Positions 55,087 to 55,996 of a stretch of DNA of 64,000 nt are shown here, in pieces. Each line of letters begins with the position of its first letter. The stretch's first letter is position 1. Under the pieces are notes generated by a model. That model did not search any database. It was not told the DNA's origin and was given only the letters and a program-made list of their open reading frames with translations. Source of the DNA: Octopus sinensis (Eukaryota); the NCBI RefSeq assembly GCF_006345805.1, contig NC_043008.1, positions 44,950,001 through 45,014,000 on the forward strand, read 5' to 3'. A program made the position numbers and the translations under genes.

Positions 55087-55996
55087 AGTGAAACCAAGTA
55101 GCAACACCAAATGGCGATGCCCCAGCATGGCCACAGCTCATAAGCTGAAACTAGAATCAATCAATCAATCAATCAATCATATATTATATACCTATATATA
55201 TATATATATATATATATACTTACTTACAAGGTGAGCAAATGGTGTACGTACGCCTCTATGTGTATATATAAATCCCAAAAATGGAATAAGAACGTAACGG
55301 ACTACAACAAAAAATATATATATATTTACATGTACATATGTACATGTATATATATATATATTATATATATATATATATATATATGCATGAATGTGTATAT
55401 ACAAATATATATAGATATATACGTATGTATGCGTGTATACATTTAGACACACACACACATACACACACATACATATATATTTAATGATTACTAGTTTGGG
55501 CGGGCTTGTTACACACATATGTATGTCATTGTGTGTGCTTGTATGTGCTTGTATGCGTGCCTGCCTGCGTGCGTGTGTGTGTGTGTGTGTGTGTGTGTTG
55601 TGTGTGTGTGTGTGTGTGTGCTGCGTGCACGTGTTATATTTATGCTTGTAAATCGAAAACCAACAATGATTCCACTGAAAGGCGTTTATTTCTAAACAAA
55701 TGCTGTAGTCAATGGGTGTGACCCAATGCATCATTGATTTAAATTTTGTGACCGTTGCCTTTGAGTCACCACTTTATCAGTTTCAAGCAGCCACGAACCA
55801 ACCTTTTCCCCTGGCAACAGGCCATATAATATTTTTGCTGTTCGCAAATCAGACAGAACTACTGCAAATGCATGCGGATTTCGTAAATATCTTACGAAGA
55901 ACAGAGCAGACCTTATATTTTACGCTGGGTACGTCATTAATAAATTGATAGGAAGCAAACATAAGAGAATGAGAGACAGACAGACAAGCAGGCAAA

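What the first reader, a model, noticed from the sequence alone, without database searches (positions are those of the whole stretch)
55113..55151. The dominant SINE's 3' tail matches this CR1 LINE's 3' UTR, with a compensatory stem-loop: candidate SINE-LINE partner pair
Seen: LINE ggcgatgccccagcatggccacagctcataagctgaaac vs SINE A ggcggtgctccagcatggccgcagtcaaatgactgaaac (e.g. ~35113-35151), 29/39 identical and colinear. Seven of the 10 differences fall in one hairpin, and the pairing is preserved (LINE CAGCT-cata-AGCTG; SINE CAGTC-aaat-GACTG). Both are followed by short tandem tails. Known: stringent-type SINEs borrow the 3' stem-loop of a partner LINE so its RT recognises them. Inference: SINE A (about 16 copies in this window) is mobilised by this CR1 family or a close relative, and the stem structure rather than its sequence is under selection.
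Basis: partly seen in the sequence, partly recalled or inferred. Interest (0 to 1): 0.75.

Follow-up and report, generated by a model that had tools for sequence, protein, structure and literature searches.

The report
SINE and LINE share 3' recognition tail
The most common short repeat (SINE) in this octopus-like genome ends in the same 39-base, two-hairpin RNA module as the 3' end of a family of CR1-like LINE retrotransposons, so it very probably hijacks their reverse transcriptase; this is a textbook mechanism, but apparently not yet described for octopus.

Summary
LINE 55113-55151 and the SINE tail match at 29/39 without gaps. No dinucleotide shuffle of the window (0 of 300) exceeded 25/39.

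The box belongs to the LINE and is not a decayed SINE. Four related LINE copies from elsewhere (57-68% protein identity, one from Argonauta hians) carry the same box between the ORF2 stop and their terminal repeats. Two more distant LINEs (41-44%) do not.

The box folds into two adjacent hairpins in all six sequences:
- Hairpin 1 (GGCGGUGC-NCCA-GCAUGGCC) is conserved in sequence.
- Hairpin 2 keeps a CAG/CUG base but varies at its top and loop, with pairing preserved.

98.5% of alignment cells pair, against 19-38% when partners are slid.

The window's LINE lineage is probably not the actual driver. It ends in (AATC)n, whereas the SINE ends in (AAAGAGTA)n or (AAAGAATA)n, exactly as relatives L001 and L003 do. 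No sampled LINE has the SINE's exact hairpin 2.

Mobilisation is inferred, not shown. This is a new member of a well-known kind, the stringent-type SINE/LINE pair, already described with compensatory stems in bivalves. I found no octopus pair in the papers I could search. Interest is moderate to low.

The parts
52100..55086 (+). Decayed ORF2 of a CR1-like LINE (apurinic-type endonuclease, reverse transcriptase and a C-terminal domain). It has several frameshifts and stops. The stop codon is at 55084-55086. The 5' limit of the element (an ORF1 remnant, about 51.6-52.1 kb) was not resolved.
   Evidence: Pfam Exo_endo_phos_2 and RVT_1 match. The three-frame translation shows the frameshifts. tblastn to LINE relatives L001-L006 covers 52232-55077. 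This is the only copy of the family in the window.
55087..55112 (+). Proximal part of the LINE 3' UTR. It is not shared with the SINE. The 'agcaac' stretch just before the box is shared with LINE L001.
   Evidence: SINE copies have an unrelated ...GGGGTCGATTTGCTCGACTAAA at the same position.
55113..55132 (+). Hairpin 1 of the shared 3' module: GGC.AUGC-CCCA-GCAU.GCC, 7 pairs with a NCCA loop. It is conserved in sequence across 5 LINEs and the SINE.
   Evidence: RNAfold gives the same structure in all six sequences. The RNAalifold consensus agrees. Pair counts show C-G/U-G/U-A at one pair and G-U/A-U at another.
55134..55147 (+). Hairpin 2: CAGCU-CAUA-AGCUG. The CAG/CUG base is invariant; the top two pairs and the loop vary between lineages, with pairing kept.
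   Evidence: Pair 4 is U-A in the SINE and C-G in all LINEs. Pair 5 is U-A in the window LINE and C-G elsewhere.
55148..55151 (+). Single-stranded AAAC (GAAAC together with the last stem base), invariant in all LINEs and in the SINE consensus. It joins the module to the terminal repeats.
   Evidence: Alignment A1 has invariant columns here.
55155..55179 (+). LINE terminal tandem repeat (AATC)6.2. It differs from the SINE's repeat unit.
   Evidence: TRF; sequence.
35113..35151 (+). SINE A 3' module (the consensus form) in the copy at about 34873-35172. It is followed by AAGTAAAAGAGTAAAATAGTAAAGAG.
13560..13598 (-). SINE A 3' module, with 0 mismatches to the consensus, in the near full-length copy 13520-13935. 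It is followed by (AAAGAGTA)n.
1842..1880 (+). SINE A 3' module (1 mismatch), followed by an AAATAAAAGAATAAA tail.
21292..21330 (+). SINE A 3' module (2 mismatches; GGU...GCC gives a U-G pair in hairpin 1).
39898..39936 (+). SINE A 3' module (2 mismatches) in the full-length copy 39549-39962. The tail is AAGTAAAAGAATAAAAG.
61686..61724 (-). SINE A 3' module (3 mismatches) in the copy 61672-62068.
28104..28142 (+). Diverged 3' module of an older SINE subfamily, which has an extra ACCCTTCAA before the box. Similar diverged modules lie at 12621-12659 (+), 41267-41305 (-), 48320-48358 (-) and 59919-59957 (-).

Best explanation
The 39 bases at 55113-55151 are the native 3'-terminal recognition module of a clade of octopod CR1-like LINEs. 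In RNA the module forms two adjacent hairpins followed by GAAAC and a short tandem-repeat tail.

SINE A is a composite. It has a tRNA-like head with A/B-box-like motifs, a body with an internal (TA/TG)n stretch, and a 3' end that is a copy of this LINE module. The join lies exactly at the 5' edge of hairpin 1.

Inferred mechanism, by analogy with stringent-type pairs such as eel UnaL2/UnaSINE1: the LINE ORF2 protein (endonuclease plus reverse transcriptase) binds the module on LINE RNA and also on Pol III-made SINE RNA. It nicks the target DNA and primes reverse transcription at the terminal repeats. The SINE is thereby copied in trans.

Hairpin 1 and GAAAC are probably read by sequence. The upper part of hairpin 2 is probably read by shape only.

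The lineage that actually drove SINE A is more likely one like L001 or L003, which share the SINE's (AAAGAGTA)n/(AAAGAATA)n repeats, than the (AATC)n lineage of the decayed copy in this window.

What is shown: the homology, that the box is native to the LINE clade, the conserved structure, and the tail-repeat matches. What is inferred: protein binding, trans-mobilisation, and which hairpin is read how.
For: - Similarity is beyond chance; BLAST E = 3e-5 and 6e-4.
- The same box sits between the ORF2 stop and the terminal repeats in L001 (68% aa identity), L003 (61%), L004 (61%) and L002 (Argonauta hians, 57%).
- It is absent from the 41-44% identity LINEs L005 and L006.
- All six sequences fold into the same two hairpins, at -17 to -21 kcal/mol and z = -2.5 to -4.4.
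- 98.5% of cells pair and 3 pairs change on both sides, against 19-38% paired when partners are slid.
- SINE tail repeats equal those of L001 and L003. Hairpin 1 of the SINE matches L003 at 20/20. Smith-Waterman z is 21 and 25.
- The LINE has endonuclease and RT domains.
- SINE/LINE pairs with 35-61 bp of shared tail at 72-95% identity, and with compensatory stem changes, are documented in bivalves (PMC11481361, PMC4824008). The stringent-recognition model is reviewed in PMC3747384.
Against: - There is no experimental evidence of mobilisation.
- No sampled LINE has the SINE's exact hairpin 2 (CAGTC/GACTG). Every LINE differs from the SINE at stem pair 4.
- Only five LINE tails were available, so each covarying pair rests on about one independent event.
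- The number of compensatory substitutions between the window LINE and the SINE depends on the alignment (29/39 ungapped, 33/40 gapped).
- The window LINE copy is dead (frameshifts) and its terminal repeat differs from the SINE's.
- Three of the four outside LINE copies come from metagenome assemblies of unknown host.
- ARAGORN and Rfam did not recognise the SINE head as a tRNA.
Confidence: 0.8

Rival explanations
1. The specific LINE family present in this window, with the (AATC)n tail, is itself the driver of SINE A.
For: It shares the module at 29/39 ungapped or 33/40 gapped, within the 72-95% range reported for bivalve pairs. Box identity to the SINE is not much lower than for L001 or L003.
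Against: Its terminal repeat unit (AATC) differs from the SINE's (AAAGAGTA/AAAGAATA). In stringent-type LINEs the terminal repeats take part in priming (UnaL2). L001 and L003 match the SINE in repeat unit, and L003 matches hairpin 1 exactly. No SINE copy in the window ends in (AATC)n.
Confidence: 0.12
2. The LINE copy's tail is a 5'-truncated, decayed SINE A inserted at or fused to the end of the LINE, so the resemblance says nothing about the LINE family.
For: Only one copy of this LINE exists in the window, so the window alone cannot exclude this.
Against: Four independent related LINE copies, one from another octopod genus, have the box at the same place, 0-60 nt after their stop codon, each with its own hairpin-2 variant and its own repeat tail. 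The window box is followed by (AATC)n, not the SINE tail. No SINE body sequence lies upstream.
Confidence: 0.02
3. The direction is reversed. The module arose in a SINE (or another small RNA), and an ancestral LINE captured it by template switching; today's sharing reflects that capture.
For: Template switching between SINEs and LINEs is known to reshuffle modules (PMC4824008, PMC4758252). Old SINE subfamilies in the window already have the module.
Against: The box is shared by LINE lineages as far apart as 57% protein identity, in both Argonauta and the window's species. This points to an old LINE feature, whereas the SINE expansion is reported as octopus-specific (PMC8967140). Either direction leaves the functional conclusion, shared recognition by the LINE RT, unchanged.
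Confidence: 0.06
4. Chance or compositional similarity between two short GC-rich hairpin-forming stretches.
For: The segment is short (39 nt).
Against: 0 of 300 window shuffles reach 26/39 or better. Smith-Waterman z is 11.5-25 with 0 of 1000 shuffles as good. Both boxes sit at the same position at the extreme 3' end. The two control LINE tails give z of about 0.
Confidence: 0.01

Closest known systems
Eel UnaL2 LINE / UnaSINE1 pair (L2 clade; Kajikawa and Okada 2002, as reviewed in PMC3747384)
   Same: A tRNA-derived SINE carries the LINE's 3' terminal stem-loop plus the same short terminal repeats. The 3' UTR is required for retrotransposition (stringent recognition), and the repeats are used for slippage or priming.
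   Different: UnaL2 has one conserved hairpin and (TGTAA)n. Here there are two adjacent hairpins with (AAAGAGTA)n, (AATC)n or (ATTTTAAAAC)n tails, depending on the LINE lineage. The UnaL2 pair is proven experimentally; this one is not.
Bivalve BivaV-SINE2 and BivaCORE-SINE1 with the CR1-14_CGi LINE (Nishihara et al. 2016, PMC4824008), and the CR1/CR1-Zenon/L2/Nimb partnerships in bivalves (PMC11481361)
   Same: Mollusc tRNA-SINEs share a CR1-type 3' tail with a LINE. They have conserved stem-loops and compensatory mutations. Shared lengths are 35-61 bp at 72-95% identity.
   Different: The host class differs (cephalopod, not bivalve). I could not compare the tail sequences, because the figures are not held. 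Neither bivalve paper reports a cephalopod SINE/LINE pair: PMC11481361 mentions neither 'octopus' nor 'cephalopod', and PMC4824008 mentions octopus only as a CORE-SINE example and in its reference list.
Tortoise Pol III/SINE with CR1, and DeuSINEs with CR1-4_DR-like tails (Ohshima et al. 1996; table in PMC3747384)
   Same: tRNA- or 5S-derived SINEs with CR1-derived 3' ends. From memory, SINE A's body resembles a Deu-type domain, and octopus SINEs are reported as mainly tRNA-Deu and tRNA-Core.
   Different: These are vertebrate pairs. Deu membership of SINE A was not tested here.

Membership tests
Stringent-type SINE/LINE partner pair (shared 3' tail) | The SINE 3' end is homologous to the 3' end of a LINE, beyond chance and beyond unrelated LINE tails. 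| tested here: met
   29/39 identity, with 0 of 300 shuffles above 25. Smith-Waterman z is 11.5-25 against 5 related LINE tails, and 0.4 and -1.6 against two unrelated ones.
Stringent-type SINE/LINE partner pair (shared 3' tail) | The shared segment is a native part of the LINE family (present in independent LINE copies), not a secondary SINE insertion. | tested here: met
   The box lies between the ORF2 stop and the terminal repeats in L001, L002 (Argonauta), L003 and L004.
Stringent-type SINE/LINE partner pair (shared 3' tail) | The shared segment forms a conserved stem-loop, supported by compensatory changes. | tested here: met
   The same two hairpins appear in all six sequences. 98.5% of cells pair and 3 pairs change on both sides; slid controls give 19-38%. 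The sample is small, with about one independent event per covarying pair.
Stringent-type SINE/LINE partner pair (shared 3' tail) | The SINE and its partner LINE end in the same terminal repeat unit. | tested here: inconclusive
   Not met for the window LINE: (AATC)n versus (AAAGAGTA)n. Met for relatives L001 (AGAGTAAAAGAGTA) and L003 (AAAGAATA)n.
Stringent-type SINE/LINE partner pair (shared 3' tail) | The SINE has an internal Pol III promoter derived from a small RNA (tRNA head). | tested here: inconclusive
   By eye the head GGCGCAGGAGTGGCTGTGTGGTAAG...GGTTCAGTCCC has A- and B-box-like motifs. ARAGORN found no tRNA, and Rfam gave no tRNA hit on one full copy.
Stringent-type SINE/LINE partner pair (shared 3' tail) | The LINE protein mobilises RNA carrying the shared tail in trans, and this depends on the stem-loop. 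| not testable with these tools
   This needs a retrotransposition assay.
Stringent-type SINE/LINE partner pair (shared 3' tail) | The activity periods of the SINE and its partner LINE overlap. | not tested
   There is one LINE copy in the window and no genome-wide data. One paper reports a joint SINE and LINE expansion in O. vulgaris, without pairing them.
CR1-clade LINE | ORF2 has an apurinic-type endonuclease followed by a reverse transcriptase. | tested here: met
   Pfam Exo_endo_phos_2 and RVT_1 match. Neighbouring genes in relatives L005 and L006 carry Exo_endo_phos.
CR1-clade LINE | There is no poly(A); the 3' end is a short UTR followed by short tandem repeats. | tested here: met
   Window LINE: (AATC)6.2. 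Other repeat units occur in L001-L005.
CR1-clade LINE | The RT domain falls inside the CR1 clade in a phylogeny with reference elements (against L2, Rex1, RTE, Jockey and others). | not testable with these tools
   No Repbase or RTclass1 reference set is available, and database hits carry no clade names. From memory, the C-terminal motif ...YWERLK.LKLYSLERRRERY... resembles the CR1/L2-group motif. This is a lead only.
Deu / Nin-DC SINE superfamily | The central domain is homologous to the Deu or Nin-DC consensus. | not tested
Octopus SINEs are reported as mainly tRNA-Deu and tRNA-Core.

The most novel reading that the evidence does not exclude
This is the first identification of the autonomous partner clade of the dominant octopus SINE: a CR1-like LINE clade whose 3' module is a double hairpin. 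Hairpin 1 would be read by sequence. Hairpin 2 would be read by shape, with different LINE lineages distinguished by the top of hairpin 2 and by the terminal repeat unit. That combination could act as a lineage 'address' deciding which LINE drives which SINE. It would make the cause of the octopus-specific SINE expansion directly testable.
Probability: 0.35. Interest if true: 0.5.

Novelty: new member of a known kind. Interest (0 to 1): 0.35.

Why it matters
SINEs are the largest repeat class in Octopus genomes: about 40% of repeats, and 11.6% of the O. vulgaris genome. Their expansion is regarded as octopus-specific. None of the octopus repeat papers I could read names the LINE that supplied the machinery.

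Tying the dominant SINE to a defined CR1-like LINE clade through a shared two-hairpin tail gives a concrete hypothesis for what drove that expansion. It also gives a small, mutable RNA element for testing stringent 3'-end recognition in a mollusc.

Conceptually it adds nothing new. It is the Okada-type 'common tail' mechanism, already shown with compensatory stems in bivalves.

Tried and rejected
- A scan of JGI metagenome contigs for CCAGCATGRCCNCAG-N7-10-CTGAAAC returned only two GC-rich bacterial coding sequences. These are chance matches, with no SINE or LINE.
- A second protein search with a profile of the five C-terminal domains found no further octopod relatives. Everything below P0009 and P0010 is 52% identical or less, and the named hits come from crustaceans and cnidarians. 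A LINE with the SINE's exact hairpin 2 could therefore not be looked for properly.
- L005 and L006 (41-44% identity) were fetched in the hope of extending the box to deeper relatives. They lack it and were used as negative controls.
- ARAGORN on the window and Rfam on a full SINE copy did not confirm the tRNA origin of the head.
- The related loci contain no SINE A bodies, so SINE/LINE co-variation in Argonauta could not be examined.
- Literature: the Albertin 2015 genome paper is not held. SINEBase supplements are not held. A full-text search for the motif CCAGCATGGCC gave only unrelated primer hits. The RTE-focused octopus LINE paper does not discuss SINE partners.
- Rejected explanations: a decayed SINE at the LINE end, and chance similarity (see rivals).
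- Target-site duplications of the LINE copy were not resolvable, because it lies in an AT microsatellite.

Full report
**1. What is at the coordinates**

The window carries one decayed non-LTR retrotransposon on the + strand.
- Pfam finds an endonuclease (Exo_endo_phos_2) and a reverse transcriptase (RVT_1) in its reading-frame fragments.
- The three-frame translation shows several frameshifts and in-frame stops. ORF2 ends at 55084-55086.
- After a 26-nt spacer comes the 39-mer GGCGATGCCCCAGCATGGCCACAGCTCATAAGCTGAAAC (55113-55151), then TAG, then (AATC)6.2 at 55155-55179.
- It is the only copy of this LINE family in the window.

- About 17 loci carry fragments.
- Six tails lie within 3 mismatches of GGCGGTGCTCCAGCATGGCCGCAGTCAAATGACTGAAAC.
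- Five more diverged tails belong partly to an older subfamily.
- Full copies have a tRNA-like head, an internal (TA/TG)n stretch, and a tail of AAGTAAAAGAGTAAAAGAGTA or ...AAAGAATAAA.

**2. Is the match more than chance?**

Yes.
In 300 dinucleotide-preserving shuffles of the whole window, scanned on both strands, the best match to the SINE 39-mer was 20-25.
- A local alignment of the last 82 nt of the SINE against the LINE 3' UTR scores 24, against 7.9 +/- 1.4 for shuffles (z = 11.5).
- BLAST found the pair on its own in both directions (E = 3e-5 and 6e-4).
- Both boxes occupy the same position, ending in CTGAAAC directly before the terminal repeats.

**3. Is the box native to the LINE?**

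A protein search with the stitched C-terminal half of ORF2 found four close relatives: P0001 (68%), P0009 and P0010 (61%), and P0002 (57%, Argonauta hians assembly GCA_054771915.1). Their contigs were fetched. All four carry the box right after the stop codon and before a tandem-repeat tail:

| Locus | Box | Tail |
|---|---|---|
| L001 | GGCGGTGCCCCAGCATGGCCACAGCCTGCGGGCTGAAAC | AGAGTAAAAGAGTA |
| L003 | GGCGGTGCTCCAGCATGGCCTCAGCCACTGGCTGAAAC | GGTTAAAAGAATAAAAGAATA |
| L002 | GGTGGTGCACCAGCATGACCACAGCCGACTCGGCTGAAAC | (ATTTTAAAAC)n-like |
| L004 | GGTGGTGCACCAGCATGGCCACAGCCAACTCGGCTGAAAC | same tail as L002 |

- Two more distant LINEs of the same broad group (L005 at 44% and L006 at 41% identity) have unrelated 3' ends. 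They give z = 0.4 and -1.6 against the SINE tail, while the five related LINE tails give z = 11.5-25.
- The 'decayed SINE at the end of this LINE copy' explanation is therefore refuted. The box is a clade-level feature of these LINEs.
- The window LINE and L001 also share 'agcaac' just upstream of the box. The SINE has an unrelated ...GGGGTCGATTTGCTCGACTAAA there. The SINE/LINE junction is thus the 5' edge of the box.

**4. Structure**

RNAfold gives the same two-hairpin fold, (((.((((....)))).))).(((((....)))))...., as the minimum-free-energy and centroid structure for all six sequences. Energies are -17.2 to -21.3 kcal/mol, ensemble frequencies 0.83-0.98, and z = -2.5 to -4.4 against dinucleotide shuffles. 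RNAalifold recovers the same consensus on an alignment of 5 LINE and 6 SINE tails.

Pair counts:
- 98.5% of cells form standard pairs, against 19-38% when the 3' partners are slid by 1-3 columns.
- Three pairs change on both sides.

Hairpin 1 (GGCGGUGC-NCCA-GCAUGGCC) is nearly invariant.
- It shows a C-G / U-G / U-A series at one pair: most sequences, then L004 and two SINE copies, then Argonauta L002.
- In the window LINE, a G-U pair is replaced by A-U.

Hairpin 2 keeps CAG/CUG at its base.
- Pair 4 is U-A in the SINE and C-G in every LINE.
- Pair 5 is U-A in the window LINE and C-G elsewhere.
- The Argonauta copy L002 adds a sixth pair; L004 does not.
- The loop is free (CAUA, AAAU, UGCG, ACU, and ACU or AACUC).

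Caveats:
- Each covarying pair rests on about one independent event.
- A gapped alignment of the window LINE with the SINE (33/40) shifts hairpin 2 by one base. 'Seven differences, four of them compensatory' is therefore one of two possible histories. Under either history, pairing is retained.

**5. Which LINE is the partner?**

- On the box alone, all pairs are similarly related (31-35 matches out of 39-40).
- What separates them is the terminal repeat. The SINE ends in (AAAGAGTA)n or (AAAGAATA)n, exactly the units of L001 and L003.
- Hairpin 1 of L003 matches the SINE at 20/20.
- The window LINE ends in (AATC)n, and no SINE copy in the window has that tail.
- In the experimentally studied stringent-type LINE UnaL2, the terminal repeats take part in initiation or slippage (reviewed in PMC3747384).
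- I therefore consider the L001/L003-type lineages, or an unsampled sister with the CAGTC/GACTG hairpin, the likely drivers. The window copy is a dead member of a sister lineage.
- No sampled LINE has the SINE's exact hairpin 2. With only five LINE tails available this is weak negative evidence.

**6. Mechanism**

Shown:
- a homologous, colinear 3' module;
- that it is native to the LINE clade;
- conserved double-hairpin potential;
- matching repeat units with two LINE lineages;
- endonuclease and RT domains in the LINE.

Inferred from established knowledge of stringent-type SINE/LINE pairs (Ohshima et al. 1996; Kajikawa and Okada 2002; PMC3747384):
- ORF2 protein binds the module on its own RNA, and in trans on Pol III-transcribed SINE RNA.
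- It nicks the target and primes reverse transcription on the terminal repeats.

My further inference from the conservation pattern is that hairpin 1 and GAAAC are sequence determinants, and the upper part of hairpin 2 is a shape determinant.

**7. Comparison with what is known**

- The kind is classical. In molluscs it has been published for bivalves, including conserved stem-loops with compensatory mutations between CR1-14_CGi and two SINE families (PMC4824008). Broader CR1, CR1-Zenon, L2 and Nimb partnerships share 35-61 bp at 72-95% identity (PMC11481361). The present pair fits those ranges.
- For octopus, the papers I could read describe SINE dominance and CR1, RTE and Dong-R4 activity, but name no SINE/LINE partnership (PMC8967140, PMC13282606, PMC9115989).
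- The 2013 catalogue of known pairs contains no mollusc.
- Repbase entries, the 1994 Ohshima and Okada octopus SINE paper, and the 2015 genome paper's supplement could not be consulted. Prior description cannot be excluded.
- The 'CR1' label is plausible (endonuclease plus RT, no poly(A), repeat tail, and from memory a CR1/L2-type C-terminal motif). It was not tested phylogenetically.

**8. Verdict**

- Refinements: the module has two hairpins, and a sister lineage rather than this copy's lineage is the likely driver.
- It is a new member of a known kind, of moderate to low general interest.
- It is useful for anyone studying the octopus SINE expansion.

Noticed in passing
window 61486-61702 (- strand relative to the SINE): A 93-bp unit is tandemly repeated 2.3 times at 98% identity. 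Each unit contains the last ~37 nt of a SINE A copy (hairpin 2 plus tail) and ~56 nt of its 3' flank. This is a young local duplication seeded at a SINE end.
   Followed up: partly
window 28104-28142, 48320-48358, 41267-41305, 12621-12659: An older, more diverged SINE subfamily has an extra ~9 nt (ACCCTTCAA, or TTCTTGAA in one copy) between ...GACTAAA and the box. It shows that the junction just 5' of hairpin 1 is variable, while the SINE-type hairpin 2 (TC..GA top) is old.
   Followed up: partly
window ~51750-51830 (+), upstream of LINE ORF2: The frame upstream of ORF2 reads ...CMFYLRGSC*HGKEGAGCRFAH..., which looks like a CCCH-type zinc finger interrupted by a stop. It may be the remnant of the LINE's ORF1. 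No Pfam hit was found, and the LINE 5' boundary is not resolved.
   Followed up: no
window 55179-55480: The LINE 3' end abuts long AT- and AC-rich microsatellites, so no target-site duplication could be read. SINE A copies also carry an internal (TA/TG)n tract of variable length. This gives spurious weak Rfam miRNA hits (mir-297, E = 0.19).
   Followed up: partly
L001, L003, L004 (ENA metagenome assemblies ERZ23491053, ERZ23499302, ERZ16768396): Octopod-type LINE fragments turn up in assemblies labelled as metagenomes, presumably as host or prey DNA. L004 is nearly identical in tail and protein to the Argonauta hians copy L002.
   Followed up: no
window 49408-49836: This is a long low-complexity stretch (ATT/ATA-type repeats, translating as poly-Ile on the minus strand) just upstream of the LINE region.
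   Followed up: no
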